This document shows positions 35,001 to 57,062 of a DNA stretch of 64,000 nucleotides, in pieces. The position numbers and the translations under genes were made by a program. The DNA is from Ranitomeya imitator. Lineage: Eukaryota. Position 1 is the first letter of the stretch, and each line of letters begins with the position of its first letter. The DNA lies in NCBI RefSeq assembly GCF_032444005.1, contig NC_091290.1:131626001-131690000 (forward strand). Reading direction: 5' to 3'. Under the pieces are notes generated by a model. It saw nothing but the letters and a program-made list of their open reading frames with translations, was not told the DNA's origin and ran no database searches.

Positions 35001-36974
35001 ATATAGTGTATAGTGTAGATGTAATACAGTGATCACCAGTGACATTATACACAGGAGCTCAGTGTATAGTGTACAGGTAATACACTGATAACCAGTGACA
35101 TTATATACAGGAGCTCTTGATATAGTGTATAGTGTACAGGTAATAGTGATCACCAGTGACATTATACACAGGAGCTCAGTATATAGTGTATAGTGTACAG
35201 GTAATACAGTGATTACCAGAGACATTATACACATGAGCTCAGTATATAGTGTATAGTGTACAGGTAATACAGTGATCACCAGAGACATTATACACATGAG
35301 ATCTGTATATAGTGTATAGTGTACAAGTAATACGGTGATCACCAGTGACATTATACACAGGAGCTCAGTATATAGTGTATAGTGTACAGGTAATACAGTG
35401 ATCACCAGATACATTATACACATGAGATCTGTATATAGTGTACAAGTAATACGGTGATCACCAGTGACATTATACACAGGAGCTCAGTATATAGTGTACA
35501 GTGTACAAGTGTACAGGTAATAAAGTGATCAGCAGAGACATTATACACAGGAAATCAGTGTATAATGTACAGGTAAGTGATCGCTAGTGACATTATACAC
35601 AAGAGCTCAGTATATAGTGTATAGTTTACAGGTAATGGTGATCACCAGTGACATTATACACAGGAGCTCTGTATTCTTTCTGGTGCAATCCCCATTAGGA
35701 AATGAGCTCCATATCTGACAATGCCGTCCAGTGTACATCTTGCCACATGTATGTGGGGTTGCAGGGCTATGTGGGGGTACATATGTGAGGTTACTGGGCT
35801 ATGTGGGGGTACATATGCAGGGGTATATATGGGGGTTGCAGGGCTATGTGGGGGTACATATGGGGTTGCAGGGCTACGTGGGAGGTATGCAGGGCTATAT
35901 GGGGGTACATATGTGGGGTTGCAGGGCTATGTGAGGGGTACATATGTGAGGTTGCGGAGCTATGTGGGGGTACATATGTGAGGTTGCGGGGGTAGCTGTG
36001 GGGGTACATATGTGGGGTTGCAGGGCTATGTGGCGGTACATATGTGAGGGGTGCAAATGGGGGTAGCTGGGCTATGTGGAGGTACATATGTGGGGTGGCA
36101 GGGCTATGTGGGGGTACATATGTGGGATGTCAGGGCTATGTGGGGGTACATACGGGGGGTACATATGGGGGTTGCTCTCATTACAAGCGGTTGTCCTATG
36201 AAGTGGTAGCAGGGCTATATATGGGGGGTTGCAGGACTATGTGGGGGTACATATGGAGTTGCACGGGGTACATATATGGGGGTTGCAGGGCTATGTGAGG
36301 GTACATATGGGGGGATTGCAGGGCTATGTAGGCTCACTTTGTGCTGTGGACCCTCAAAGCCCAAGGTCCAGGTGGACACGATGCAGACGATTCAGAGGTA
36401 GCAGAGATTCAGGAAACCGCCGACTGGCCGCAGACGTACTGGAAGCCACAGGCAGGCTGGAGATGTCCAGCTGGACTGGACAGCAGACAAAATTCTGACA
36501 GAAAGACATACTAGAAAGGTGTCTTGGTAGGCCCGAATCTATGGGTTTCTGGCATCATCTGACATTGTTAGGGCAGCTACTTCCAATAGGTGACATCAGC
36601 GATATTGTTTTCTTTCCTTCTGGGAGAGCGCTAACAATAATAATTAATAATTCAATGTATTAATCTTGTCCTCCAGCTATGAAGACTGCGTTGGGCCAGG
36701 AACATTGGAAGTGTATCTCCCAGCAGATGATCCTCCACCTTACTCCTTAGAAGATCCACATCTCGGTCCCAGCTCTGCGGAGATGCCACTGTGTTCACAA
36801 ACTGATACAGAACATTTCCAGGTCTCCTCGCCTTTATGTACTGTTAACTTACACGTTGTCACACCGGTCCAGACTACGGCCAAGAGGAGTCTTCACCTCC
36901 CTATAATACCGATGGACATGTTAAAAAACGTTGCCTCCCCGGCCGTTGGGAGGTCAGAGGAAAATATGAGTTAG
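17028..36974 (+). CDS. BEAN1: BEAN1 (brain-expressed, NEDD4-associated), 218 aa: join(17028..17052,23699..23905,26258..26384,36677..36974)
   Basis: MSIKVTCT (cf. human MSFKRPCP), TM segment [33 protein letters not shown] motifs [15 protein letters not shown] and DDPPPYSL. Total 657 nt, in frame across all junctions; lies between CDH5 and TK2. Confidence 0.92.
17478..18860 (-). repeat. 33-bp minisatellite encoding ([11 protein letters not shown] / [11 protein letters not shown])n; homogeneous 17478-18500, degenerate to ~18860
   Basis: About 31 near-identical units plus about 10 diverged units; open frame 17465..18502. Confidence 0.95.
19155..19296. other. Assembly gap (142 N)
   Basis: N run. 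Confidence 1.
20701..21840 (-). mobile_element. Internally deleted Tc1 derivative carrying a 31-bp minisatellite (20829-21785)
   Basis: TA followed by TIR-like CGGTGGCTTGCAAAAGTATTTACCC at 20701; minus-strand unit ccATGAAGACCAAGGAGATCTCCAAACAACA; 372-bp higher-order duplication. Confidence 0.7.
22650..23420. repeat. ~345-bp tandem array with inverted internal symmetry and decayed hammerhead-like cores (possibly Penelope-like pLTR derived)
   Basis: Blocks restart at ~22670, ~23020 and ~23360; CTGA(T/C)GA cores on both strands. Confidence 0.55.
23699..23905 (+). CDS. BEAN1: BEAN1 TM exon
   Basis: ctacag acceptor, gtgagc donor, 207 nt. Confidence 0.92.
24078..25650 (-). mobile_element. Old Tc1-like transposon (~1.57 kb) with degenerate transposase
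   Basis: Diverged TIRs (CAGCAGGTGAAGTAAG / CAGCGGGGAAAATAAG, shared tgacatgaaattctcaccaga); ORF 24462..24650 has [22 protein letters not shown]. Confidence 0.85.
26258..26384 (+). CDS. BEAN1: BEAN1 exon (GISYATSS...SYPDYPP)
   Basis: ttacag acceptor, gtaaga donor, 127 nt, phase 1-2. Confidence 0.88.
26697..29207 (-). mobile_element. Full-length piggyBac DNA transposon (2511 bp) in BEAN1 intron 3
   Basis: Perfect 17-bp TIR CCCTCCGTCACATACAA (26697-26713 and 29191-29207); TTAA TSD at 26693-96 and 29208-11. Confidence 0.97.
27029..28804 (-). CDS. piggyBac transposase, uninterrupted, 591 aa from ATG 28804
   Basis: DDD triad ([31 protein letters not shown]), acidic N-terminus, C-terminal Cys-rich domain CxxC..CxxC..CxxH..CxxC; no stops or frameshifts. 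Confidence 0.95.
   Translation of the reverse strand: MERKMYNLSKQLDVEEVTNMLLDDRDLTLNEDLGEESEIDSHDEVEECVLDSETEQDGDSGEDEEVGSYYIRKDKNTKWNKKSFQKKRREPLNIITHLPAVIGTARNAKTAVECWNSVFTDDILDSIVTYTNQYIDIIKDKYICNRTIKPTDEIELRAFFGLLYLAGAYRANRQSLEELWGKDGDGVEKFSLVMSINRFKILIRCLRFDDRTTRTERKTHDRLAPIRDIFQRFVVNCKQSYYPGENLTIDEMLPGFRGRCAFRQYIPSKPNKYGIKMYALVDASKTYTYNLEVYAGKQPEGPYCVSNKPIDVVKRLAEPLFGSGRNITADNWFTSCDLIDYLKIQKLSYVGTVRKNKRELPPQFVSVKERQQYSSMFAFHNGKALVSYVPHAKKIVLLLSTLHDDAAIDPGTGAEKKPEIITFYNATKGGVDTADQMCSTFNVSRNIKRWPMVIFFAMLNLGGINSQVIYLENKLEPLRRRLYLKKLAHELVLGELRRRSVKTIGIPSRLQVQLKRFRPEDDGEKSPSAPPHKRRRCTTCQTESGTRRLSNYECLKCHKAICLTHAKMVCNSCYLLCKCDFSGETSASTSD
29776..30042 (+). repeat. Two tRNA-derived (SINE-head-like) fragments within a local duplication
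   Basis: A-box TGGCTCAGTGG (~29782), B-box GGTTCGAGTC (~30029), shared gcctatgaccgtgga(g/a)acatg. Confidence 0.4.
30085..31030. repeat. G-rich minisatellite (gcagggctatgtgggggtacatat)n
   Basis: Degenerate tandem units; same family at 35750-36330. Confidence 0.85.
31370..32700 (+). mobile_element. Non-autonomous Helitron with a nested palindromic segment and a 21-bp internal tandem array
   Basis: A|TC start, 3' hairpin cccgat-gcgttaga-atcggg then CTAG|T, no TSD; (ctgggcaatatactacgtca)n at 32160-32650. Confidence 0.8.
33335..35672. repeat. ~60-bp minisatellite (acattatacacaggagctc..tatagtgtacaggtaatacagtgatcaccag)n
   Basis: Roughly 40 tandem units. Confidence 0.95.
35750..36330. repeat. G-rich minisatellite, same family as 30085-31030
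   Basis: gggctatgtgggggtacat units. Confidence 0.85.
36677..36974 (+). CDS. BEAN1: BEAN1 last coding exon
   Basis: ctccag acceptor; [12 protein letters not shown]; TAG stop; ORF 36666..36974. Confidence 0.92.
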
Positions 36975-43046: not shown

Positions 43047-44459
43047 GTATGTTCTCTTATACACTTGTAGACATTTTTTTGGCAACCAAAGCAACGCAGA
43101 GTATAAAATAAAGGATTTATTAATAAATCATGATCTTCTTGGAGAGTTATGCAATGATGGGGGTAGTGGCACCAAATCTGAGAGCACCTTGATGTAGAGG
43201 CAGAGACCCCGATTCCAGTGATATCACTTACTAGGCTCTGTGTTGCTGTTTCAGTAAAATCAGTGTTTTAACAGCAGTAGATTATCACTACAGGACTAGG
43301 TGTCTCGTGCCTTCTAGTCCAACCACACCCCCAACACTGATTGGCTGCTTTCTATGTACACTGACAGAAAGCTTCCAATCAGTGGTGTGGGCGGGGTTAT
43401 ACACACCTCAGCATTCCGAGATCTGCAGAGAAAACAGTGACTGTATCAAAATGACAGCAAGCGGCCTACTAAGTGATATATCGTTGGAATCAGGGTCTCA
43501 GCTCCTACATTATGCTACTCTCAGATTACATCTTACATCAGATTAAATCTTTTGTTTTTGGTTACTTCCAGATGATTTAGCTGAAGGCTGGGATAATGCC
43601 AGTGTATTTCATGGCTACAATACGGACTGTAATGGCCGCCTCCCGAATTGAACTAACAGTCTCCTCTGCTACCGGGCCGGTCTGTATACAGATCATGAAA
43701 TATGCTCATGTAAACTCGGCTTAATTCATCATTTGTGACTTTTCAAAATGAGGCAAAGTTTTTTTGCACAAATGTTTTCCGTGACCCGAGTGTAATAAAA
43801 ATTCTGCTGAACTTTGTTTTGGTGGCAGTTTAAGACTAATGTGTGATATTTTAAGGAAACAAGACTTTTGGGTCTAAAAAAAAGTACAAAAAAATAGGTC
43901 AAAGACAAAAATTTTTTTTAAATTTTGTGCAAAATTCAACATTTTGTAGAATTTGAAACGCAAAAATGGAATCAAAGATCGCACGATAAAGGAGAAAACC
44001 AGATGATGGTTCGGCCAATTAAAGGGGTTGTCTATTGATGGTCTGTCCTTACGGCTCAATCTTACACGCCGGCCAGTCCGTGCACCGATTTATTAATCCA
44101 AATAAGAGTGCACCTACTTGGATGAATTTGACGCAAAATTCACCAGTGTGAAAAGAAAGATAAAAGAAAAAAAAATTACTTAAAAAAATGCAAAGTGTAA
44201 TGTAAATTAAGAATTCTATGCAGCCCCGGAGGAGAAGGAGCGGCCCGGCTCTGCTACATCTGTGTCTATTCCAGAGCTGACTTTCGCTTTTGCTTCTTCC
44301 TTTCCTCCAGTGATCTGATTGACACACAACACATCCTATGTGGTCGGGCACAATGCACACACCCAGCCAATGTTTTGGAGGGAGCTGGAGGCAGAGCCTG
44401 AGTAACTTCCTCAATGCAGAACTTAGCAGGAAGGAAAAGCCACAAAGTGAGGGCTAAGA

Positions 44460-44789
44460 ATGAAGAGCAATGCAGACAGGCAGCGGCTTTACCAGGACTA
44501 CATCGCCCACTATGAGTCCACGAGCCACGAAGGCAATGTGGCATTGTGTGACCCTCCGCTGCGGTGCAGGGGCGACGCTCACCAGTGCAAGGGCGACGCT
44601 CACCAGTGCAACTGCCCTGCAGCCCTGGGGGAAAACTACTCCCAGCTCATTAGACAGAACTTACAGAGCAAAAAGCTGGAGCATAAGGTGGAAGCGCTGA
44701 AGCAGATGATGAAGGGGTTCGCAATCCTGGAGCTTATCTGTGTCAACTTATTTCTCTTTCCATGGAGGAAAGAGATCAGGACACTGAAG
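44460..44789 (+). CDS. SPATA2-like coding exon 1
   Basis: ATG 44460; AAG|gtagga donor; 330 nt. Confidence 0.85.
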
Positions 44790-47700
44790 GTAGGAAAAGC
44801 GTGGAAGAGGAGGCGAAACCAAGGGGAAGCGCAGGGGAGGCGGAAAAAAAGGGAATGCGCAGGGGAGGAGAAACAAGAGGAAGCGCAGGGGAGGAGAAAC
44901 AAGGGGAAGCGCAGGAGAGGAGAAACAAGGGGAAGCGCAGGGGAGGAGAAACAAGGGGAAGCGCAGGGGAGGAGAAACAAGGGGAATCGCAGGGGAGGAG
45001 AAACAAGGGGAAGCGCAGGGGAGGAGAAACAAGGGGAAGCGCAGGGGAGGAGAAACAAGGGGAATGCGCAGGGGAGGAGAAACAAGAGGAAGCGCAGGGG
45101 AGGAGAAACAAGGGGAAGCGCAGGGGAGGAGAAACAAGGGGAAGCGCAGGGGAGGAGAAACAAGGGGAAGCGCAGGGGAGGAGAAACAAGGGGAATCGCA
45201 GGGGAGGAGAAACAAGGGGAAGCGCAGGGGAGGCAAAAAAAAGGGAAAGCGCAGGGGAGGCGTAACACAGGGGGCAGCAATGAGAAGGGGAGGGAAAGAG
45301 TAAGGGAGGGAAAGCACAGGGGGAGGCAATGAGCAGGGAAGGAAAGAGCAGGAGAAGCAAAGTGCATTGGAGGCAAAGCATAGGGGAGGTGAAGCGCAGG
45401 GGGAAGGAAAGAGCAGGGTGAGGTGCAGCACAGGGGGAGGGGAAGAGTACTGGAGGTAAAGCACAGGGGGAGGAAAGAGCAGGGGGGATGGCAAAGCACA
45501 GGGGGGAGGGAAAGCTGTAGGGATAGAGATCCTTTGTAAGTCGAGTTTACAAAACACTGAATACAGGAAGAGGTGATGACCTCACAGGAGGAAGGAAAGC
45601 TGCAGATTTATCATAGAAACTAAAGGTCACCTGTGTTACAATGCAAAATAAAAGATGTCAGTGAATTATCATATTTTAGAGGGCTGGTAACATTAAAAAA
45701 ATGCACTGCATTATTTTTTTGCCTTTTTTTATTGCCTTTATGTCTTTACCTATTGGTTGACTTTACTTGCAGACTCTTTCTCTGCATTGTCTCTTTTTCT
45801 CTGTAGTGGTTTATATTTGCAGTGGCTCTTTTTTTCTGCAGCTGTTCTCTTTGCAGTGGCTCTTTTTCTCTGCAGTGGTTCTTTCACTGCAGTTGCTCTT
45901 TTTCTCTGTAGTGGCTGATTTCTGCAGCGGCTCTTTTTCTCTACGGAGACTCTTTCTCTGCAGCGGCTTTTTGTCTGTAGTGGCTTATTTTCTGCAGTGT
46001 CCCATTTTCTCTGCAGTGCCTCCTTTTCTCAGCAGTGGCTTTCTTTCTCAGCAGTGGCTTTCTTTGTCAGTAGTGACTCTTTTTCTTTGCAGTGGCTTTC
46101 TTTCTCAGTAGTGACTCTTTCTTAGCAGTGACTCTTTTTCTCAGCAGTGGCTTTTTCTCAGCAGTGGCTTTCTTTCTCAGTAGTGGCTCTTTTTCTCAGC
46201 AGTGGCTTTCTTTCTCAGTAGTGGCTTTCTTTCTCAGTAGTGGCTCTTTTTGTTTGCAGTGGCTCTTTTTCTCAGCAGTGGCTTTCTTTCTCAGTAGTGG
46301 CTCTTTTTGTTTGCAGTGGATCTTTTTCTCTGCAGTGGCTTTCTTTCTCAGTAGTGGCTCTTTTTGTTTGCAGTGGATCTTTTTCTCTGCAGTGGCTTTC
46401 TTTCTCAGTAGTGGCTCTTTTTGTTTGCAGTGGCTTTTTCTCTGCAGTGGGCTTTTTGTTTGCAGTGGCTCGTTTTCTCTGCAGTGGTCTCTTTTTCCCT
46501 GTAGTAGGAGTAGAAACAAGCATACATGGTGCAAGTCCATTCAATGTTGATAGGGCTGGCGAACAGACGAGTGATGGCGTTGAAGGGACCTGCATCATGT
46601 GGCATGAACAGAATAATTGGGACCCTCCACTTCTACACCCCAAGCAATCAGGCATTTCCCATCATGCCTAGGTGGCCATTATAGCTCCCAAATAGGTGGT
46701 CGCCTAGCTTTCCCTAGTTGTGCACATGTGATACATCCAGTTGGTTTCCTTTTATGTTTATTTTTTGCTATAATATTTTATGTTTTTGTTTTTACAGAAA
46801 TTTACTGGAACTTTTGTCTATTTTATTCAACCTGCCATCCCAGAAGATGCCATCAGGCAGATCCTCCAACGAGTGGGTTACTCGATAGTGTCCAAAACGG
46901 AATATACGATCAGAGGCAAGATAAATAGTGAAGAAGCCAAGCAGACGGCCTTTGACTTGTATCTGTCGAGAATTCAATGTGACGATATGCTTTGGCGCCT
47001 CAATGAAGATAAATCTGTCTCCATAAGTCTTTTGGTTCATGGGCCTGGCCATGAAGCAAAACATGGAAGTGATCCTACTGGCCAAACTGGTAAAGATACC
47101 AGAGAACCTGAAGAAATACAAAATTTAGATCTTAAAAGCAACCACTCCAGTAATGAAGACCCTATAAAAGCCGTGGAGATGACCATAACCAGTACAAGCA
47201 GCCAAGACGACGTCTCTGATCTTTCCGAGGAGAAGCCACGTTATTATACCAAGCGCATGGACAGCGATGAGTTCCTCTACAACTACAGTGACCTCAACTT
47301 GGCCCAACAGCCAATTTTCCCATTATATATCAAGCCAAAAAAGTGGGTAGCTCCAGTCTCCGAAGAACCAAACTTTGCCAAACCTGATGGATCAGCCAAA
47401 AACGAGGGCAGAGACCTTGCCGAGAAGATCACTTATGACCTACAAGGTGACAACATTGACATAACGACGTTTACGGAACAGCTAGACCCTCCGAAATCTC
47501 TGGTGTCTAATGAATCCCCGGCTGAAGTCATCGTGCCGACTAAGCAAGAGCGCGTGGTGTCCAAACTAAAGATGCTGAACATATCCGGAGAGTCGTTGAC
47601 TTACCCTATCGAGGAAACTGTGCCGCCCGATTTGGCAAAATTTTCTGAAAGCAGCGATTTTGGCAAAATTGAGGTCAAGTGGGCATTCCTGACTACTAAG

Positions 47701-48006
47701 GAGGGCACGGAGAGCTTTGCCAGTCCGATGTCCCCATCTTCTGATTTCTCAATGTTGAATATTTCTGGCAATCCACCGATTTGGACTCCAGGTACCGATA
47801 ATAGGCTCCGAGAGCCACCCAACTCCACATACATTCCACCACGAGCGCCGGGAAACGAGGGTATGAGACTGCCAAATATCAAAGCAGAGGAAAATCACTT
47901 CCAGGTCTCTTCTCCAACCGGAGATGCCCTTCTGGTTAATGAGTATAACATACATGAAGATACCAAGGAGGACTACGTGATGATCACCAAAAAGGACCAA
48001 CACTGA
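44460..48006 (+). CDS. SPATA2-family PUB-domain protein, 512 aa: join(44460..44789,46798..48006)
   Basis: ILELICVNLFLFPWRKEIRTLK|KFTGTFVYF..ILQRVGY..AFDLYLSRIQC matches the SPATA2/SPATA2L PUB domain, with the same phase-0 intron position as recalled; upstream in-frame stop at 44403; acceptor at 44309-10. Confidence 0.88.
44818..45500. repeat. Purine-rich tandem repeat (ggggaagcgcaggggaggagaaacaa)n in the intron
   Basis: Tandem units directly after the splice donor. Confidence 0.9.
45780..46490. repeat. Degenerate tandem repeat (gcagtggctctttttct)n
   Basis: Short tandem units with higher-order ~63-bp copies. Confidence 0.85.
46798..48006 (+). CDS. SPATA2-like coding exon 2
   Basis: ttacag acceptor; ORF 46780..48006; TGA stop. 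Confidence 0.9.
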   Translation, partial: KFTGTFVYFIQPAIPEDAIRQILQRVGYSIVSKTEYTIRGKINSEEAKQTAFDLYLSRIQCDDMLWRLNEDKSVSISLLVHGPGHEAKHGSDPTGQTGKDTREPEEIQNLDLKSNHSSNEDPIKAVEMTITSTSSQDDVSDLSEEKPRYYTKRMDSDEFLYNYSDLNLAQQPIFPLYIKPKKWVAPVSEEPNFAKPDGSAKNEGRDLAEKITYDLQGDNIDITTFTEQLDPPKSLVSNESPAEVIVPTKQERVVSKLKMLNISGESLTYPIEETVPPDLAKFSESSDFGKIEVKWAFLTTKEGTESFASPMSPSSDFSMLNISGNPPIWTPGTDNRLREPPNSTYIPPRAPGNEGMRLPNIKAEENHFQVSSPTGDALLVNEYNIHEDTKEDYVMITKKDQH

Positions 48007-50228
48007 GTCTGATGGACGGGGCTGCGTACTGTGTATACAGGGAGGTCACTAATGCTATTCAGTAGCGCCGCCTAGTGGTGGGTGAAGAAAGTCAGACTTT
48101 TTTTTTTTTTTACTTTTAATTCTTTGCCTGTCGGAGCGAATTCCTGTTCTGAATCAGACTATTGGTAGAAATTTTAGCCAAAGCCAAAACTCAGGGTTTT
48201 TCTGAAGAACTCATCATGAGCAGTCAGACATTCTCAACTTTTGAGGTTTTCTTTTTTTTTAAACTTTGTCCAGAATGGAAAGTTATAAAACTTTGCAAAT
48301 CACCCCAACTTTTCCCCCAGTTAATTTAGATGCATTGATATTGAATCGGACTGATTTGGAGTACAGATGATGGCAGTGATGGGTCAGCTCTTGTCTCCTC
48401 CTCTGAAGGTTCTGCTTTTCAGACGTTTCCTACACTTGGGTCACGTTTACACGCTCAGTATTTGGTCAGTATTTTACATCAGTATTTGTAAGCCAAGACC
48501 AGTGATACAGGAGCTGAGGTGACCCATCACTGCCATCATCTGTGCTCCATAGGAGAACGTCCTGATATCAGAGCAGCTGTGGGCAGAAAATAGTCTGGAG
48601 AAAAGCAGAGGTTTGGAAGCTACTTACATGCTATTTTTTTTTTCTACGGTAATGAAGACCAATCTCCTAATAAAGTGATTTGCAACGTTTCCCTGCTAGA
48701 CAAAATTATGAAAAATAAAATAAAAAGTTTACTTTTTCAGGTGGATATTTAGATAATCATAACGATATATTATTGACTGTGAAGCATCCTCATTATGTAT
48801 GTAGCACAATAAATGATCCTTTTCTATGTATATTTGTTTCTTATCAAATCCTGCCAGCTAAAAAAAAACAAAAAAAAAAGTACTAGAAATTCACTAGTAT
48901 TCTACTCCAGAGCTGCATTCATAATTCTGCTTCTTTGGAAACAAACACATCCCTAACAGTTCATCTGAGCTCCTCCTATATTAATGACTGATAAGTGGCA
49001 AAGCTTCCCAGATTTAGGCAGCAATGACAGATTTCAGCTCTGAAGCCAGTAGAATTACGATTTCAGCTCTGCAGGAGTATAATGCATTTACTTTTTTTTT
49101 AAGTGGAATATTTCACCATGTAAACTCTATAACTGAAGACTCGTCATATATAACCTTCTACCCTCAGCCGTGTAACTTCATGGTTTGTGGAGGGAGAACC
49201 TACATCGGGGGGAATTTAGTTTTTACAGAACTGGGTGAACCGGTTAGTATTTTTTACTGTCCTTTGCTAGGTTTTCATCTTTGGGGTCTTTTTTTGGGGG
49301 GGTTGACTCCTAGAGAGGATAGAAGGTCAAAACTAGTGATGAAAAGTTGTCAGAGAGGTCCAAGTTCTACGTAGTTCCTTCGTATCAATGAGTATGAAAC
49401 TTTTTCAACTTCTTATTAACATACCTAATGGGCTGTATAAGAGACAGATAAGTGACCCTGATGCTGCTGGTCCTAAAGGGAAAATAAGGATGAGTAAATA
49501 TCCCTTTAAAAGAAAAAAGGGACATTTTCGTTAAATAATACAAAAAGGAAGGGAGAGGAGGGGTGTGCAGCTGCAGATTCCCTCTATCTGCCAGACTGCA
49601 CAGGGAGATTAGGGGACATATCTGAAAAAATATATATCAATCTGCTCAGCGGACGCAGCTCTACAACATGCTGCCTGCGGATTAATAACGGGACAGGTTC
49701 CCTTTAAGGCCGTAGGTCTGAGACATAACCCAATAACACCCTATTACACCCAGTTTTGCTTTATGCTTCTGCTGTAAACTGGCCATCATCACAATGCACT
49801 TGCAACAAAAATTTAGAGCACTTTATTATTATTTTTTAATACGGCAACATTGTACAACACAGAAAGGAAAAAATAATGGCTGGACTAAAACAAGGAATAA
49901 ATAAAAAGATAAAGAAATTACGTTTTACCAAAATGACATATCACTATATTCTCTGTACGCTCAGAAGATGCTGAAGCCAAAGAGATCGACCCTTGGTCCG
50001 CGATAGCACTTCCGAGAGAAAGTAGCTGGTCCCCCAAAAATGGTCCGATCCGGGGATCGAGTTAGGTCAACCGTCATGGATAGTCGGCGGCTGTACTGGT
50101 GCACCAAGCTGGCAGCTGTGATTGGCTCAGGGATTAGCAGCGCAAAGGTCAGAAAAATAGCTGCCTCCATAATGTGTCCGCAAGAGGAATACGGACAGTG
50201 TGTGCACGAGAGAGACGACGTTCTAATG

Positions 50229-50306
50229 TCAAGCGGCAAGGATCTTCCCGCGATTCTCTTCATAGTGCTGGATCATCTCCTCCATGCTCTTATCTGCGTC
50301 AATCAC
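50229..50306 (-). CDS. TK2: TK2 exon 10
   Basis: [25 protein letters not shown]. Confidence 0.93.
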   Translation of the reverse strand: MIDADKSMEEMIQHYEENRGKILAA

Positions 50307-53300
50307 CTAAAAAAAAATCAGAAAAGGGAAAATGACACAAGTACGGAGAATGTGAACCCAGATACCGCAGGAGGAGGTGAGCTGTGATATCACCTATTGT
50401 GAATGGTGGATCCTGTGTTATCTACTGTATATAGAGGTGTTATCAGTCATTGTACAGGAGGAGGAGGTGAGCTGTGACATCACCTATTGTGAATGGTGGA
50501 TCCTGTGTTATCTACTGTATATAGAGGTGTTATCAATCATTGTACAGGAGGAGGAGGAGGTGAGCTGTGACATCACCTATTGTGAATGGTGGATCCTGTG
50601 TTATCTACTGTAGATCGAGGTGTTATCAGTCATTGTACAGGAGGAGGAGGTGAGCTGTGACATCACCTATTGTGAATGGTGGATCATGTGTTATCTACTG
50701 TATATAGAGGTGTTATCAGTCATTGTACAGGAGGAGGAGGAGGTGAACTGTGACATCACCTATTGTGAATGGTGGATCCTGTGTTATCTACTGTGTATAG
50801 AGGTGTTATCAGTCACTGTACAGGAGGAGGAGGTGAGCTGTGACATCACCTATTGTGAATGGTGGATCCTGTGTTATCTACTGTGTATAGAGGTGTTATC
50901 AGTCATTGTAGAGGAAGAGGTGAGCTGTGACCACCTATTGTGAACAGTGGATCCTGTGTTATCTACTGTAGATCGAGGTGTTATCAGTCATTGTACAGGA
51001 GGAGGAGGTGAGCTGTGACATCACCTATTGTGAACGGTGGATCCTGTGTTATCTACTGTAGATCGAGGTGTTATCAGTCATTGTACAGGAGGAGGAGGTG
51101 AGCTGTGACATCACCTATTGTGAACGGTGGATCCTGTGTTATCTACTGTAGATCGAGGTGTTATTAGTCATTGTACAGGAGGAGGAGGTGAGCTGTGACA
51201 TCACCTATTGTGAATGATGGATCCTGTGTTATCTACTGCATATACGCAAATATGTTTCTGACCCGACTGCGCGTTCCGGAACAAATGCTATCTAATACGT
51301 TGTGAACTGAATATAATTGTACCAAACCCTCAGCCGTGAGAAGTACCAGGTTTAAGACTACTTTCAGCCATCTGAATTTGAGCCTGATTTCTCACATTCA
51401 CTGACAACAATTGGAGCTTTTGCAAATATGAAGGAATCAAAAGGCAACGTAAAGTGCAGAACTTCACTACACAATTAGTTAAGATGTCCCAACTTTTTAA
51501 AGGTTTGATCCCTGGGGGAGGGGGTTCAATATCTCTGCTTGCTTTCCTTCTGCCGGAACCTTCATTCGGAGCGTAATAAGCAGAAACACTTACGAGAACC
51601 GGCGCTGGCACTGGGAATGAGCTTCGGTCAATCAGCCACTCTTCATAGAGGCCGTGGATGGCGCTCAGATACTCCTGCAAGAGAAAGGCATGCCCGGGCC
51701 GGGACTTGTACTCACATCCATGTTTAATAAGAAGCATCTAACACATGAGCACATGGGTCCCCGCGGAGGGGCACAACCTGATCCCCGGCCGACTTCTCCC
51801 CTGATCCCCGGCCGACTTCTCCCCTGATCCCCGGCCGACTTCTCCCCTGACCCCCGGCCGACTTCTCCCCTGACCCCCGGCCGACTTCTCCCCTGATCCC
51901 CGGCCGACTTCTCCCCTGACCCCCGGCCGACTTCTCCCCTGATCCCCGGCCGACTTCTCCCCTGATCCCCGGCCGACTTCTCCCCTGATCCCCGGCCGAC
52001 TTCTCCCCTGATCCCCGGCCGACTTCTCCCCTGATGCCCGGCCTACTTCTCCCCTGATGCCCGGCCAACTTCTCCCCTGATCCCCGGCCGACTTCTCCCC
52101 TGATTTATGTGCTGACTAAACTGACAGCCCTGCTGGGGACTTTTCTAGGTTCCCAAGAGTGACTGTCCGGAGGTCACACAACCCAGAGATGTGTCGTATC
52201 ACCGAGAAATTCCAAGTCTTTGAATCCCTTTGATCTTGACAGTGACGATCAAAGGGTTAAATGACCAGGATCAGAGCCATCCCCCGATCCTGGACGCTGG
52301 ATAAGAAGCCGAGCTTGCAATATAAGCTCCACACTGGGGTCGCCTTCATAGCTGCCGTAAAAAGTTGTGCTTGTGGCTATTAAGGGGTTAAATGGACCTT
52401 AAAAGGGTTGTCCATGTAAATGATAGTTGATAACTTATTGATAGTTCGGGTCCGACCTCTCGGGCCTGCATCAGTCGGCAGCGCACCTGCCCGACCGCCG
52501 CTCCATTCATTCTCTAAGAAGCTGCCAAGCGCTGGGCTATTCACAGGAGTCACATAGAGAATGAATGGAGCAGCGGTCAGGCATAAAAGTGCCACGTTCT
52601 GCTGATCAGTGAGGGTCCTAGCAGTCGGACCCCCACCGTTCAATAAGTTGTCGCTTATCCGCTGAATAGATGATTACTGTACAGCCCCTTTAAACAATGT
52701 GCATGCAATTAGGATAAGGCTCTTACCAGTGGGATCACCCTCTCTTCCTCTCTGCACCTCATCTTTAGTCTCTGGTAGCACGTTTCAGGGGATGTGCGCA
52801 GATAAACTGTGAAAAAACAAGTTCACATGACGGCATTATTATGCCAAATAGGTGCTGGATTATCAGATATTCCGAATTATCCACTTGTAAGAATAGGAAA
52901 AACAAAACAGTATTTCTATTCCTAATTAATTCTCATTTTTCTTTTTTGGGAAAAGGTGTTCCAAAGTGGCCGCCATGACGCTTTACTTACCTATCAGATC
53001 AACAGAGAGGTCAATATTCTTTGTGATCCAATTAAACCACTCGGTTAACACCACGTAATCCACTTCAGGCATCTTCCCACTACAAAACAGAGGTGGACGG
53101 AGGCGTAAAGGAGGCGTAACAGGTCAGGACCCAATCCATTACTGCTTTTATGCCAGTAATTTAGACAATAAAAAAAGTCTGATAAATCGAGGATTAAACT
53201 CTTATGTAAAAAAAGACAAAACCTAAGATAAAAACAAAGTAAATTAATAAAAAATATCAATAGTGCATGAAAATAACAGAGGATTTAGTTAATTCTAATA

Positions 53301-56300
53301 AAAAAAAAAAGTAAAAGCCATCCAACCACGTCATGGTGACCCTATTCGGGATGGTCCTAACCTACAGGATTAAAACCTTACCATGTATCTAATAACGTAA
53401 ATGTGAAGAAGGGCCGAGCAGGACCAAAACAGCCGTGCCCCCCGCATACTTTTTAAAAAGTTACCAAACTGTTCTAAAACTTTTTACACCAGTTTAGTAA
53501 CTTTCTAAAAAGTTGTAATATAACCTTATTGACTAGATGTAAAGATAAGAAGAAGAAAAAAAAAGTGCCAAATTTGTCAAAGCAGATTGTTTTAACTTTT
53601 CCGTATAGAGCGAATATGTTAAAGGCCGACTACCCCTTTAAGAAAGAGTTGTTTGGGGTTTTTTTTTGTCTTCTTTTTGAGCCTACCTTTTATAAAGGTT
53701 TTCCACAAATATGTACTTTGCGCTATGGATGGACCTCTCCATCATTTTCACCGGAGAGAGCTGCAAAGGAAGACACAGGTAAGAGTCGGGGTGAGGGCGC
53801 ACAGGTGGGGATCCCCAGGAACGGCAATGTGTATCAGATCGTAGGGGGGTCCGGCCGCTCGGATATCCACTGATCATGAAAACGGGAAACTATTGAGATG
53901 ATCGGTGAATGTCCCATTGGTGAGACCCCCTCGTAGTGTAACGAGACCTGTTTTCTCGTGCTTCTGGCAACTGAGGGGATCTCTTCGGTCGTAGGATACC
54001 GGCAGCCTTACCGAGGGCTTGGTGTGGACATCCAGCATTGTGAGCTGCACGTAGGTCTGCAGCGTTAACCCCCATCTTGTCGGATCCGTGTACATGAGAC
54101 CCTGAAAAAAGTATAAAGAATACGAACATGGCGGTAATGTAACCGGCACAGGGTATACGACGGCGGTAATATAACCGGCACAGGGTACACAACGGCGGTA
54201 ATATAACCGGCACAGGGTACACGACGGCGGTAATATAACCGGCACAGGGTATACGACGGCGGTAATATAACCGGCACAGGGTACACGACGGCGGTAATAT
54301 AACCGGCACAGGGTATACGACGGCGGTAATATAACCGGCACAGGTATAAGAACCTGAGATTGTACGATAACTCACCAGTGGATTGTGGCCTTGGACATCT
54401 CTCCATTTTGCAACAGGCTCCGTCATAACCTGAAAAATAAATCAATATATTAAAAAACCGATCGCTAAGCAGAACGACTGCGATTCTCAACGGTACAGAA
54501 GACGTCTTCTCCATCTACCTCCTTCTCGGGAGGAGGACAGGGATTCTGTAACCTATCTGCGCCCTGAGTCACAGGGAAAAGAAAGTGGAAAATGGGCAGC
54601 GTCACGTGGGCAAATGGCAAGTTAACCATCTACATGCTGCTGACAGTGATTGACAGCAGCGTCTAAACGCTTGATCATCCGTGATCGGAGTTAGCTCTGA
54701 TCGCTGCTGTCAGGAGGCAGGTGCTGGATGTACAACACACCCTTATGGAGACATACTTTTACATCAGGGTGGGTGAAGGGGTTAATAAACCCGCCCTATA
54801 GTACACGAATATATAGGGTGATTACCTCCAGGTTGGCAGTATTGGAGAAATATTCCAGACAGCTGGTTTTTCCACTCGCTATGTTTCCCTCCACACAGAT
54901 CTGAAAAGGAAGGATCGAAAGGAGACGGACTTTTCTGCAAATTCTGCGATCGCGCTGCGGCATATATACGTATAATATTACAATGGGCGACACTTACCGT
55001 GCTTTTGCCTTTGTTTTTCAAACCGTTAACTAGAAAGAAGGAAGAAAAAATAGGATCAAATTAATATCCAATTACAAGAGATTTATTTTTATTTGTATTA
55101 TTTATTTAGTATTTAATTTTTATTTATCAACTTTGATGTGGCCGTAAAGCAGTTGAGAAGAACTCAGAAAAAGAACTCTCCCTAATTAGTGAGCTCACCG
55201 ACGGGCCCTCGGTTAACTCATTCTGCAGCCAGCAATATACACAGAGGCTACACAAGGCGAAGGGTCCAACATTTTTAATGACGCTCAATAGTGAAAATCA
55301 TTTTTTGCACAAAATATATGCATTTAACCCCTTTACGACCTTGGATAGATATGTCCAAGCTAGTCTCCCACACTTTGACGCGGGTTCTGGCCCTGAGCCC
55401 GCATCTTTCCCAACGCTTGACAGCTGTCACGTGCCTCTGTAACAGCCGCGGGTGGAGGTGCGCCATTCTACATATGCGGTACAATGAAATCATTGTTATT
55501 AAAGGGTTAATGTAAACTACAGCGAGCAGGTCGGCCTCCTGTGACAGGATGTTCGGCTCCTGACCGCAAGGCGAGATTAACCGTCGCTGTGGGGGAGGCG
55601 GTACATGCAGATATAAAAGGGGCACCGCGGTATAACAACATGGCGCGGAAACAGACAACCCCTTTAAATAGTCATTTTCCATATGCTTTGTTTTGTTACA
55701 TCCTTTTAAAGGGGAAGTTGGGTGACAACCAATATGTCAACCATAACATCATCCACAGAGGTTGTCACCCAAATCTTCATACTGTACAGTGATAGGTCTG
55801 CGACAGGGTACCAATGTATATATATATATATATATACTAGATTGTGGCCCGATTCTAACGCATCGGGTATTCTAGAATATGCATGTCCCTGTAATATATG
55901 GATAATGATGATTCCAGAATTCGCGGCAGACTGTGCCCGTTGCTGATTGGTCGAGGCAACCTTTATGACATCGTCGCCATGGCAACCATTATGACATCAT
56001 CTTCGCTGTGCCCGTTGCTGATTGGTCGAGGCCGAATCAGAGACGCGGGATGTCTACGTCCTTTATGACATCATCGTCGCTGTGCCCGTTGCTGATTGGT
56101 CGAGGCCTGGCGGCCTCGACCAATCAGAGACACGGGATTTCTACTTCGATGCTGTGCCGGTCTCTGATTGGTCGGCCTCGACCAATCAGAGACACGGGAT
56201 TTCTACTTCGATGCTGTGCCGGTCTCTGATTGGTCGGCCTCGACCAATCAGAGACACGGGATTTCTACTTCGATGCTGTGCCGGTCTCTGATTGGTCGAG

Positions 56301-56379
56301 GCCTAGCGGCCTCGACCAATCAGAGAGCAGGGATTTCCAGGACAGACAGACGGACAGACAGATGGAAAAACCCTTAGAC

Positions 56380-56446
<67 letters not shown>

Positions 56447-57062
56447 AAAGAAACCAATCAGAATTCTGCTTTCATTTTTGGAAAAGCCTTAGAAAAATGA
56501 GAGATAGAATCTGATTGGTTGCTATGGCCAACTGCAGCAAAGCCCATAGCAACCAATGAGCGGCCCTTCTGCTTTCATTTTCCAAAAGGCTTTCACTAAA
56601 TGAGAGCTGGAATCTGATTGGTTGCTATTGGATAACTGCAGCAAGGCCAATAGTAACCAATGAGCCTTCTGCTTTGATTTTAATTAAAAGGCTTTTGGTA
56701 AATGTGACTTGGAACCTGATTGGTTGCGATAGGCAACTACAGCGCTGTCTCTAGTAACCAATCAGATTCCAGTTCTTATTTAGCAAACGTTTTTTGGTGA
56801 ATGATAGCAGCATTATTATTGGTTGTTATGAGTAATCACGGCGGCTTTACCAGAAGCCATTCCCACTCGTTCTCCTCAGCGGTCAGGATATGCTGGGAGT
56901 TGTAGTCCGAGCACAGCCGTATCTGTACATGGCGTGTAGCCGGGATTTACCTTGTCCGTCGCTGTGTAGTAACCGGCTCATGATGGAGCTGCTACCGACT
57001 GGCGGACAACGTATCACGGTGAGCAGCCTGCAGCACGCCCGCGCCGCTGCAGAGAGTGACAT
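50229..57062 (-). CDS. TK2: Mitochondrial thymidine kinase 2, 254 aa: complement(join 56951..57062, 54998..55029, 54826..54900, 54376..54429, 54012..54101, 53687..53760, 52991..53079, 52727..52806, 51594..51674, 50229..50306)
   Basis: P-loop [51 protein letters not shown]; Arg/Ser/Leu-rich N-terminal targeting peptide; 10 exons totalling 765 nt, in frame. Confidence 0.96.
50368..51243. repeat. ~88-bp satellite-like tandem repeat (~10 units)
   Basis: gaggaggtgagctgtgacatcacctattgtgaat..tcattgtacag units. Confidence 0.95.
51594..51674 (-). CDS. TK2: TK2 exon 9
   Basis: [27 protein letters not shown]. Confidence 0.95.
51777..52105. repeat. 23-bp minisatellite (ctgatccccggccgacttctccc)n
   Basis: About 14 near-perfect units. 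Confidence 0.95.
52727..52806 (-). CDS. TK2: TK2 exon 8
   Basis: [26 protein letters not shown]. Confidence 0.95.
52991..53079 (-). CDS. TK2: TK2 exon 7
   Basis: [29 protein letters not shown]. Confidence 0.95.
53687..53760 (-). CDS. TK2: TK2 exon 6
   Basis: [24 protein letters not shown]. Confidence 0.95.
54012..54101 (-). CDS. TK2: TK2 exon 5
   Basis: [30 protein letters not shown]. Confidence 0.95.
54130..54345. repeat. ~32-bp minisatellite filling TK2 intron 4
   Basis: cggcggtaatataaccggcacagggtatacga units, about 6-7 copies. Confidence 0.9.
54376..54429 (-). CDS. TK2: TK2 exon 4
   Basis: [18 protein letters not shown]. Confidence 0.95.
54826..54900 (-). CDS. TK2: TK2 exon 3 (P-loop)
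   Basis: [25 protein letters not shown]. Confidence 0.95.
54998..55029 (-). CDS. TK2: TK2 exon 2 (32 nt)
   Basis: ttctag acceptor, gtaagt donor. Confidence 0.85.
55837..56390 (-). mobile_element. Second, shorter copy of the same Helitron family, inserted in a (TA)n tract
   Basis: CTAG at 55837-40 plus hairpin, near-identical to the 32660-32700 end (reverse); 5' end cccttagacaattatata; (TA)n on both sides. Confidence 0.8.

What the first reader, a model, noticed from the sequence alone, without database searches (positions are those of the whole stretch)
44460..48006. An additional SPATA2-family PUB gene between BEAN1 and TK2
Seen: an intact two-exon gene with a PUB-like N-terminus and a long acidic Ser/Pro-rich tail, with no Cys/His PHD finger. 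Known: SPATA2 and SPATA2L use the non-canonical PUB domain to bind CYLD, and SPATA2 bridges CYLD to HOIP/LUBAC. Human SPATA2 (20q13) and SPATA2L (16q24) lie elsewhere, and I recall no such protein-coding gene between human BEAN1 and TK2. Inference: a third, uncharacterised paralog retained in non-mammalian vertebrates, possibly an alternative CYLD adaptor in TNF/NF-kB or necroptosis signalling.
Basis: partly seen in the sequence, partly recalled or inferred. Interest (0 to 1): 0.7.

Follow-up and report, generated by a model that had tools for sequence, protein, structure and literature searches.

The report
Third SPATA2-family gene beside TK2
This is a real, spliced and transcribed frog gene for a third, unstudied relative of the CYLD adaptors SPATA2 and SPATA2L; it has sat between BEAN1 and TK2 since before sharks and bony vertebrates split, and mammals have it too, in a worn-down form in placentals.

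Summary
The gene has two exons, 44460-44789 and 46798-48006 on the + strand, and encodes 512 aa. Both exons hit the SPATA2 PUB-like domain. The tail is acidic, rich in Ser and Pro, and has no Cys. RNA contigs from three studies join the exons at the predicted GT..AG intron.

The genome is Ranitomeya imitator. NCBI already lists the identical protein as "uncharacterized protein". I found no paper on it or on its zebrafish namesake, si:ch211-189a15.5.

A maximum-likelihood tree separates three clades: this gene's group, SPATA2 and SPATA2L (support 100/97 to 100/99). This gene's clade follows the species tree from sharks to mammals. The order BEAN1 > gene > TK2 is the same in frog, quail, a teleost and armadillo, and a shark has TK2 next door. 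So the gene is a true third paralogue, not a moved SPATA2 or SPATA2L.

Monotremes, marsupials and some placentals keep it.

Function is inferred only. The wall of the PUB pocket that binds CYLD in SPATA2 is conserved. The frog protein lacks SPATA2's HOIP-binding motif and zinc finger. Instead it has four short tail motifs conserved across about 450 My. My best guess is a CYLD adaptor that does not dock on LUBAC.

The parts
44345..44459 (+). 5' untranslated region; transcript contigs begin here
   Evidence: RNA contigs start at 44345, 44361 and 44422 with no loose ends upstream. This argues for the gene's own promoter, not read-through from BEAN1.
44460..44789 (+). Exon 1 coding part (residues 1-110): N-terminal half of the PUB-like domain, ending ...PWRKEIRTLK
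   Evidence: ORF and GT donor. PF21388 hit at 33 bits. 5ljm residues 76-108 align. Identical to P0001:1-110.
44564..44611 (+). In-frame 21-bp tandem duplication (2.3 copies) inside exon 1, encoding the repeated GDAHQC stretch
   Evidence: TRF. It lies in a low-confidence loop of the model, residues 23-57. Copy number differs among dendrobatids.
44790..46797 (+). Single phase-0 intron (2008 bp, GT..AG), mostly minisatellite: 26-bp unit at 44809-45273 and 19-bp unit at 45777-46505
   Evidence: TRF. Spliced contigs from three studies skip exactly this stretch. Quail has an intron at the same place, LK|TFTG.
46798..47037 (+). Exon 2, C-terminal half of the PUB-like domain (residues 111-190), including F112-T113-G114
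   Evidence: PF21388 hit at 49 bits. 5ljm alignment. AF2 pLDDT about 90. Z 14.7 to 5ljm.
47260..47319 (+). Tail motif A (residues 265-284), DSDEFLYNYSDLNLAQQPIF; Y273 and D275 are near-invariant across gnathostomes
   Evidence: Alignments, per-clade table, conservation island. Short helix 266-272 in the model.
47551..47628 (+). Tail motif B (residues 362-387), ...KLKM...LTYPIEETVPP
   Evidence: Bony vertebrates have YP[IV]EET and cartilaginous fish have YPIAET. The motif is absent in monotremes, placentals and spiny-rayed teleosts.
47806..47841 (+). Tail motif C (residues 447-458), LREPPNSTYIPP
   Evidence: It is the most conserved island in the tail. It is present from sharks to armadillo.
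47953..47985 (+). Tail motif D (residues 496-506), acidic run followed by YVMI, near the C-terminus
   Evidence: The model shows a beta-hairpin at 493-508 with pLDDT about 80. In several ray-finned fish the motif forms the very C-terminus. It is lost in mammals.
47038..48006 (+). Rest of exon 2: disordered acidic tail and TGA stop
   Evidence: pLDDT is mostly below 50. pI 4.7 and no Cys.
48007..48300 (+). 3' untranslated region (it runs on past 48300)
   Evidence: Spliced contigs continue about 86 bases beyond 48300. I found no AATAAA or ATTAAA within 600 bases of the stop.
34460..36974 (+). 3' part of the upstream neighbour BEAN1
   Evidence: Gene call with PF28336 BEAN1_helical, converted from locus coordinates 1-2515.
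50229..57062 (-). Downstream neighbour TK2 (deoxynucleoside kinase family), convergent with this gene
   Evidence: Gene call with PF01712 dNK. The P-loop exon at 54796-54993 hits dNK. The exon ORFs read as TK2 (that reading rests on my own knowledge of TK2).

Best explanation
This is an intact, transcribed, two-exon gene of Ranitomeya imitator. It is the frog orthologue of an ancient third member of the SPATA2 family, which NCBI names after the zebrafish gene si:ch211-189a15.5. The gene has stayed between BEAN1 and TK2 since before cartilaginous and bony vertebrates split. All of that is shown. The mechanism is inferred. [quoted passage not shown] The pocket wall that SPATA2 uses for CYLD is kept: N96 for N98, F112 for Y114 and T113 for T115. 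SPATA2L, a known CYLD partner, also has Phe at the Y114 position. The 320-residue acidic, disordered tail carries four short linear motifs under long-term constraint and acts as the docking part. In the frog, the Asp-Leu-Tyr HOIP-binding motif that sharks, coelacanth, bichir and sturgeon still show in front of motif A reads Glu-Phe-Leu, and the C-terminal zinc finger is gone. The protein therefore probably does not bring CYLD to LUBAC the way SPATA2 does. It probably brings CYLD to other partners instead. Candidates are TRAF proteins, because motif B (PIEET) fits the TRAF2 consensus P/S/A/T-x-Q/E-E, and ATG8/LC3 proteins, because motif D is an acidic run plus Y/F-V-x-I/L, which is LIR-like.
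For: Gene model and expression. Domain: PF21388 at 100 bits for the whole protein against a cutoff of 27. The AF2 PUB domain has pLDDT about 90. Its best structural matches are 5ljm (Foldseek E 4.8e-7; VIA Z 14.7 over 172 residues), then the HOIP PUB domain at Z about 12.8. Separate paralogue: IQ-TREE gives this gene's clade 100/97, SPATA2 100/99 and SPATA2L 100/99, and the clade's internal order follows the species tree. R. imitator has its own SPATA2 on another chromosome. Opossum and coelacanth have SPATA2L as well as this gene, and chimaera has SPATA2 as well as this gene. Synteny BEAN1 > gene > dNK/TK2 holds in frog, quail, the teleost Hoplias and armadillo, and a shark has the gene next to dNK. 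CYLD wall: Elliott et al. 2016 (PMC5031558) report that Y114A, T115A and T115N weaken CYLD binding. Across 43 sequences of this clade that position is F in 40 and Y in 3, followed by T in 42. SPATA2L has F and S there. The stretch NLFLxPW[RK]KE..K.[FY][TS]G.F is the most conserved part in all three clades. Tail motifs: conservation islands at 265-284, 367-387, 448-458 and 502-506 stand out from a background of 0.2-0.3, and the per-clade table shows their spread.
Against: Y114 is Phe here, and only an Ala substitution has been tested in SPATA2. T94 is Leu. Motifs this short match consensus patterns by chance, so conservation shows function but not which partner. Motif B reads PIAET in cartilaginous fish, which does not fit the TRAF2 pattern. 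hhalign aligns only the PUB domain between this clade and SPATA2, so homology between motif A and the SPATA2 PIM rests on inspection. Mammals have lost motif D, and placentals have lost most of the tail motifs, so the tail's role is dispensable in some lineages.
Confidence: 0.6

Rival explanations
1. The PUB-like domain has a ligand other than CYLD, for example another B-box or USP protein, or one of the protein's own tail motifs folding back. On this reading the gene is a scaffold in a pathway unrelated to CYLD, TNF or NF-kB.
For: This clade's PUB domains are only about 22-26% identical to SPATA2. The upper-wall residue T94 is Leu and Y114 is Phe. The C-terminal hairpin is modelled with pLDDT about 80, which could reflect intramolecular docking. 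The tail shares no alignable motif with SPATA2.
Against: The segment that carries the CYLD-binding wall is the most conserved part across all three clades. SPATA2L has the same Leu and Phe and still co-purifies with CYLD (PMC5031558).
Confidence: 0.3
2. It is not an independent gene. Its exons are alternative 3' exons of BEAN1, as NCBI's 'BEAN1 isoform' models in R. variabilis, Ficedula and Pterocles suggest.
For: P0002 joins BEAN1 residues 1-167 to exon 2 at the same acceptor. Two bird models are named BEAN1.
Against: Exon 1 has its own ATG and encodes the first half of the PUB domain. The chimeric model would encode only half a domain. R. imitator contigs from three studies start 38-115 bases upstream of the ATG, carry the exon 1-exon 2 junction and have no loose ends. 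In most genomes the gene is called separately from BEAN1.
Confidence: 0.06
3. It is the frog orthologue of SPATA2L or SPATA2, simply moved to a new place.
For: Automatic names such as 'spermatogenesis-associated protein 2-like' are attached to some orthologues.
Against: Three clades are fully supported. Other genomes carry SPATA2L or SPATA2 together with this gene. The same position is kept from teleost to armadillo.
Confidence: 0.01
4. It is a decaying or non-functional copy in frogs.
For: The intron is full of minisatellites and exon 1 holds an in-frame tandem duplication. Placental copies have lost motifs.
Against: The 512-codon frame is intact. There are 27 or more anuran orthologues with invariant motif residues. 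The spliced transcript is seen in three studies.
Confidence: 0.02

Closest known systems
SPATA2 (human; PUB domain structure 5ljm; R. imitator copy P0307)
   Same: Both have the N-terminal non-canonical PUB-like domain (PF21388) with the same fold (Z 14.7). Both keep the PW[RK]KE...[FY]TG wall that binds CYLD in SPATA2. Both have a long disordered tail with short motifs. An intron interrupts the coding region in both. The intron appears to sit at the same place, but that point is inferred from read-through ORF fragments and gene spans.
   Different: It belongs to a separate clade. The frog protein has no Asp-Leu-Tyr-Thr PIM and no C-terminal Cys-rich zinc finger, whereas R. imitator SPATA2 has both. 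It has four other tail motifs instead. It lies at a different locus.
SPATA2L
   Same: It has a PUB-like domain with Leu at the T94 position and Phe at the Y114 position. It lies on the same chromosome as this gene in coelacanth and opossum.
   Different: It belongs to a separate clade. SPATA2L has Ser, not Thr, after the aromatic residue and His in place of Y118. Fish SPATA2L proteins have Cys-rich tails. None of motifs A-D was seen in it.
HOIP (RNF31) PUB domain
   Same: It has the extended PUB fold, at Z about 12.8 over about 160 residues.
   Different: Sequence identity is only about 15%. HOIP's pocket binds Asp-Leu/Met-Tyr peptides, whereas the SPATA2-type pocket does not (PMC5031558). HOIP is an E3 ligase, not an adaptor.

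Membership tests
SPATA2 family (PUB-like adaptors, Pfam PF21388) | PUB-like domain scoring above Pfam's gathering cutoff | tested here: met
   The whole protein scores 100 bits against a cutoff of 27. Each exon alone scores 33 and 49 bits.
SPATA2 family (PUB-like adaptors, Pfam PF21388) | Extended PUB fold like 5ljm | tested here: met
   AF2 model residues 1-190 have pLDDT about 90. 5ljm is the top hit by Foldseek (E 4.8e-7) and by VIA (Z 14.7, rmsd 4.0, 172 aligned).
SPATA2 family (PUB-like adaptors, Pfam PF21388) | Binds the CYLD USP domain through the lower wall of the pocket (Y114/T115 in SPATA2) | not testable with these tools
   The residues are conserved as F112/T113. No binding or complex prediction could be run.
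SPATA2 orthologue group | Groups with SPATA2 in a tree | tested here: not met
   The SPATA2 clade (100/99) excludes it. R. imitator's own SPATA2 (P0307) sits in that clade.
SPATA2 orthologue group | Internal PIM Asp-Leu-Tyr-Thr that docks on the HOIP PUB domain | tested here: not met
   The frog sequence reads D-E-F-L-Y-N-Y there, and other frogs read E-F-L-N-K-Y. Asp-Leu/Ile-Tyr survives only in the cartilaginous fish, coelacanth, bichir and sturgeon orthologues.
SPATA2 orthologue group | C-terminal Cys-rich zinc finger | tested here: not met
   There is no Cys after residue 171. SPATA2 shows invariant Cys columns.
SPATA2L orthologue group | Groups with SPATA2L in a tree | tested here: not met
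   The SPATA2L clade (100/99) excludes it. Opossum and coelacanth carry SPATA2L as well as this gene.
Third SPATA2-family group (si:ch211-189a15.5-like) | Lies between BEAN1 and TK2, same strand as BEAN1 and convergent with TK2 | tested here: met
   and partly 65.
Third SPATA2-family group (si:ch211-189a15.5-like) | Tail motifs A (Y-S/P-D-L/I ... P-I-F), B (Y-P-I/V-E-E-T), C (E-P-P-x-S-x-Y-I-P-P) and D (acidic run plus F/Y-V-x-I/L) | tested here: met
   All four are present in the window protein at residues 265-284, 362-387, 447-458 and 496-506.
Third SPATA2-family group (si:ch211-189a15.5-like) | Two coding exons split in phase 0 between ...LK and [KT]FTG | tested here: met
   Frog and quail.

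The most novel reading that the evidence does not exclude
The third paralogue is a LUBAC-independent CYLD adaptor. On this reading it keeps the CYLD-binding PUB wall. In bony vertebrates it has swapped the ancestral HOIP-binding motif and zinc finger for a TRAF-type P-x-E-E-T site, a phosphorylatable E-P-P-x-S-x-Y-I-P-P site and an LIR-like C-terminus. It would then send CYLD to TRAF complexes or autophagic membranes, or hold CYLD away from LUBAC. That layer of TNF/NF-kB and cell-death control would have decayed in placental mammals, which would explain why it was never found in human or mouse work.
Probability: 0.17. Interest if true: 0.75.

Novelty: new member of a known kind. Interest (0 to 1): 0.5.

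Why it matters
SPATA2 is the adaptor that activates CYLD and brings it to LUBAC, and it controls TNF-induced NF-kB signalling and necroptosis. SPATA2L is its only recognised relative. A third paralogue was found here in every jawed-vertebrate group sampled. It has a conserved CYLD-type pocket but a different set of docking motifs. It is missing or worn down in the mammals used for almost all ubiquitin-signalling work. CYLD regulation in fish, frogs, birds and marsupials may therefore have a branch that human and mouse studies cannot see. Zebrafish, Xenopus and chicken each offer a direct genetic test. The gene is also a clean example of microsynteny (BEAN1-gene-TK2) held for over 400 million years.

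Tried and rejected
- **Tail homology to SPATA2.** A profile-profile comparison of this clade against SPATA2 aligned only the PUB domain, so I could not establish tail homology formally.
- **Literature.** Paper searches found nothing usable for the zebrafish name, for invented paralogue names, for LOC and Xenbase ids, or for SPATA2L phylogeny. The search failed on syntax.
- **Synteny look-ups that gave little.** The paddlefish P0039 look-up found no record. The opossum and platypus look-ups showed no neighbour within 10 kb. Mammalian synteny therefore rests on armadillo.
- **BEAN1 exon.** A Pfam scan of the last BEAN1 coding ORF gave no hit. BEAN1's identity rests on the gene call.
- **Earlier findings.** A word search of the scan's earlier findings found nothing.
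- **A possible frog PIM.** I considered the dendrobatid F-L-Y-N-Y as a regained PIM. I rejected it because other frogs read F-L-N-K-Y.
- **The 290-aa ORF 44460-45332.** It reads through the splice donor into the 26-bp minisatellite. I rejected it because spliced RNA skips that stretch.
- **TRAF6-type reading of motif B.** I considered it and rejected it, because there is no aromatic or acidic residue at +3.
Full report
**1. What is in the sequence**

The + strand between 44460 and 48006 holds a two-exon gene. Exon 1 starts at the ATG at 44460 and ends at 44789 with AAG|GTAGGA. That is 110 codons, so the intron is in phase 0. Exon 2 begins at 46798 after a pyrimidine tract and TTTTACAG, and runs 402 codons to a TGA at 48004-48006.

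The mechanical ORF list also shows a 290-aa frame (44460-45332) that reads through the donor into a 26-bp minisatellite. This is an artefact. The 2008-bp intron is mostly two minisatellites, a 26-bp unit repeated 17.7 times at 44809-45273 and a 19-bp unit repeated 39.6 times at 45777-46505.

Pfam PF21388 (SPATA2_PUB-like) hits exon 1 at profile positions 64-98 and exon 2 at positions 100-163. The solved human SPATA2 PUB domain (5ljm) aligns to the two exons at residues 76-108 and 110-177. The domain is therefore contiguous across the splice.

The tail (residues 191-512) has pI 4.7, 9.9% Ser, 9.3% Pro and no cysteine.

**2. Expression**

Logan contigs from four studies were laid on 44300-48300. 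Three of them (X1, X5, X15) contain a single contig that joins 44789 to 46798, skipping 2008 bases with GT..AG ends. All coding bases match. The one difference, G>A at 48041, lies in the 3' untranslated region.

- The contigs begin at 44345-44422, which is 38-115 bases upstream of the ATG.
- They run on past 48300.
- No loose ends point to upstream exons.

The runs are only guessed to be RNA, but a spliced contig is itself evidence of RNA. Contigs cannot give expression level, strand or tissue.

**3. Identity of the genome and the protein**

The word search returns a 512-aa NCBI protein, "uncharacterized protein [Ranitomeya imitator]" (P0001). It is 100% identical to exon 2 and to exon 1.

P0001 served as the reference for the whole protein.

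**4. Relatives**

- Orthologues in 27 anurans, down to Xenopus, Spea, Pelodytes and Bombina, turned up first.
- Profile word searches then reached caecilians, salamanders, tuatara, turtles, alligator, about 60 birds, squamates, platypus, echidna, eight marsupials, paddlefish, sturgeon and characiform teleosts.
- The exhaustive HMMER search gave 259 hits at 50% clustering. It added coelacanth, bichir, bowfin, many teleosts, sharks, chimaera and divergent placental copies. The named placentals are armadillo XP_058135877.1 (misnamed WIPF1-like), meerkat LOC115280921, tenrec LOC142431436 and a horse UniProt entry.
- NCBI names several orthologues after the zebrafish gene si:ch211-189a15.5.
- No paper in the library mentions that name, the LOC ids, the Xenbase id XB5732280 or any proposed third SPATA2 paralogue.

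**5. Is it SPATA2 or SPATA2L moved elsewhere?**

No. I built a careful IQ-TREE tree of the PUB domain with 64 sequences and 183 columns under LG+C20. It gives three groups:

| Group | Sequences | Support |
|---|---|---|
| This gene's group | 44 | 100/97 |
| SPATA2 | 8 | 100/99 |
| SPATA2L | 10 | 100/99 |

Hagfish sequences form a fourth branch.

Inside this gene's group the order follows the species tree. Cartilaginous fish branch first. Ray-finned fish come next, then coelacanth, amphibians, sauropsids and mammals. Within mammals the order is monotremes, marsupials, then placentals on a long branch of 0.58.

Single genomes hold several members together:

- R. imitator has its own SPATA2 (P0307) on another chromosome.
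- Opossum has SPATA2L (P0274) and this gene (P0115).
- Coelacanth has SPATA2L (P0292) and this gene (P0162).
- Chimaera has SPATA2 (P0206) and this gene (P0284).

**6. Synteny**

Gene calls around the exact proteins give BEAN1 (+) > this gene (+) > a dNK-family gene (-) in four species: R. imitator, quail, the teleost Hoplias and armadillo. In the shark Heptranchias the dNK gene lies 9 kb downstream in the same orientation.

In the window, BEAN1's coding part ends at 36974. TK2 spans 50229-57062 on the minus strand. Its exon ORFs read as TK2, and its P-loop exon hits PF01712.

The intron sits at the same codon boundary (LK|TFTG) in quail. The gene has therefore held both its position and its structure since the common ancestor of jawed vertebrates.

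I did not examine the human interval.

**7. Anatomy of the protein**

An AlphaFold2 model built on a 108-sequence alignment gives a confident PUB domain (residues 1-190, pLDDT about 90). Within it, a disordered loop at residues 23-57 holds the dendrobatid in-frame 21-bp duplication. The tail is disordered, except for a short helix at 266-272 and a C-terminal beta-hairpin at 493-508 with pLDDT about 80.

The best structural matches are the SPATA2 PUB domain 5ljm (Foldseek E 4.8e-7; VIA Z 14.7, 172 residues aligned), then the HOIP PUB domain (Z about 12.8) and the PNGase PUB domain (Z about 8).

Across 36 orthologues from shark to frog, the tail has a conservation background of 0.2-0.3 with four islands:

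| Motif | Residues | Sequence in the window protein | Spread |
|---|---|---|---|
| A | 265-284 | DSDEFLYNYSDLNLAQQPIF | Y273 and D275 near-invariant across gnathostomes |
| B | 362-387 | KLKM...YPIEET | YPIAET in cartilaginous fish; absent in monotremes, placentals and spiny-rayed teleosts |
| C | 447-458 | LREPPNSTYIPP | Most conserved tail island; sharks to armadillo |
| D | 496-506 | acidic run, then YVMI | Very C-terminus in several ray-finned fish; lost in all mammals |

Placental copies keep motif A, sometimes keep C, and have lost B and D.

**8. How it most likely works**

Shown: the domain is a SPATA2-type PUB domain.

From the literature: Elliott et al. 2016 (PMC5031558) found that SPATA2 binds the CYLD USP domain through the lower wall of the PUB pocket. 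Y114A, T115A and T115N weaken binding, while N98A and T94K have little effect. They also found that an Asp-Leu-Tyr-Thr PIM at residues 336-339 docks on the HOIP PUB domain.

Measured here, across 43 sequences of this clade:

| SPATA2 position | This clade | SPATA2L |
|---|---|---|
| Y114 | F in 40, Y in 3 | F |
| T115 | T in 42 | S |
| N98 | N in 39 | N |
| T94 | mostly L | L |

SPATA2L co-purifies with CYLD. This stretch is the most conserved part in all three clades.

Inference: CYLD is the likeliest ligand of the PUB domain. I put this at about 55-60%.

The PIM looks different. Sharks, chimaera, coelacanth, bichir and sturgeon have Asp-Leu/Ile-Tyr-Ser/Thr immediately before the invariant Tyr of motif A. 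Tetrapods have Glu-Phe-Leu there, and teleosts have Glu-Met-Gln or Arg. The ancestral protein may therefore have docked on HOIP, but the frog protein lacks the canonical motif.

Sharks also keep a Cys-rich C-terminus with a faint B-box hit. Frogs have no Cys in the tail.

Two partner guesses rest on my own knowledge of motif consensus patterns and are only leads:

- Motif B fits the TRAF2 pattern P/S/A/T-x-Q/E-E.
- Motif D fits an LC3-interacting region, an acidic run followed by F/Y-x-x-I/L/V.

The shark form of motif B does not fit the TRAF2 pattern.

**9. Rivals**

- **A non-CYLD ligand** for the PUB domain remains a serious alternative (about 0.3).
- **Alternative BEAN1 3' exons.** NCBI's R. 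variabilis "BEAN1 isoform X1" joins BEAN1 residues 1-167 to exon 2 at the same acceptor. Two bird models are also named BEAN1. That chimera would carry only half a PUB domain, and R. imitator contigs start just upstream of exon 1. Read-through may exist as a minor form.
- **A relocated SPATA2 or SPATA2L, or a decaying gene**, is effectively excluded.

**10. Novelty and verdict**

The gene is in public annotation as an uncharacterized protein. InterPro-style names already call it a "SPATA2 PUB-like domain-containing protein". Its existence is therefore not new, but its status has not been described in any paper I could find. That status has four parts:

- it is a distinct, gnathostome-wide third paralogue;
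- it has a fixed position between BEAN1 and TK2;
- its tail has its own set of conserved motifs;
- it has decayed in placental mammals.

I class it as a new member of a known kind and rate the interest as moderate.

**Limits**

- No binding was tested.
- The tree has no invertebrate outgroup, so the order of the duplications is open.
- Contigs give no expression level or tissue.
- Only the best 150 of the 259 representatives were seen.
- The human locus was not examined.

Noticed in passing
window 44564-44611: An in-frame 21-bp tandem duplication in exon 1 repeats GDAHQC. Related dendrobatids have different copy numbers (Dendrobates tinctorius has about four GDVH units) and other frogs have none. 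It lies in a disordered loop of the PUB domain, so it is a coding minisatellite that the fold tolerates.
   Followed up: partly
window 44809-45273 and 45777-46505: Two large minisatellites (a 26-bp unit x17.7 and a 19-bp unit x39.6) fill most of the single intron. They cause strong purine skew and several long spurious ORFs on both strands.
   Followed up: partly
P0002/P0003 (R. variabilis), P0127, P0138 (birds): NCBI models named 'BEAN1' fuse BEAN1's N-terminal 167 residues (transmembrane segment and PPxY region) to exon 2 of this gene at the normal acceptor. This may be read-through splicing between the neighbours. No such contig was seen in the four R. imitator runs laid.
   Followed up: partly
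P0162 and P0292 (coelacanth); P0115 and P0274 (opossum): This gene and SPATA2L lie on the same chromosome-scale contig in coelacanth (188 Mb) and in opossum (761 Mb). From my memory of human map positions, BEAN1/TK2 at 16q21 and SPATA2L at 16q24 are likewise on one chromosome. This hints that the two arose by an old duplication within a chromosome, not by whole-genome duplication.
   Followed up: no
P0179, P0181 (sharks): Shark orthologues end in a Cys-rich stretch (C-x2-C pairs, faint B-box hit at E 0.05), and ray-finned fish keep a C-x4-C-x2-C remnant before motif C. The ancestral protein probably had a SPATA2-like zinc finger that tetrapods lost.
   Followed up: partly
P0084, P0099 (salamanders): Salamander orthologues are about 830 aa because of an insertion of about 250 residues between the PUB domain and motif A.
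   Followed up: no
window 50377-50943 and 53874-54514: The TK2 introns hold tandem arrays that create long repetitive ORFs (units reading ...[22 protein letters not shown]... and ...[19 protein letters not shown]...). They are probably further minisatellites or transposon remnants.
   Followed up: no
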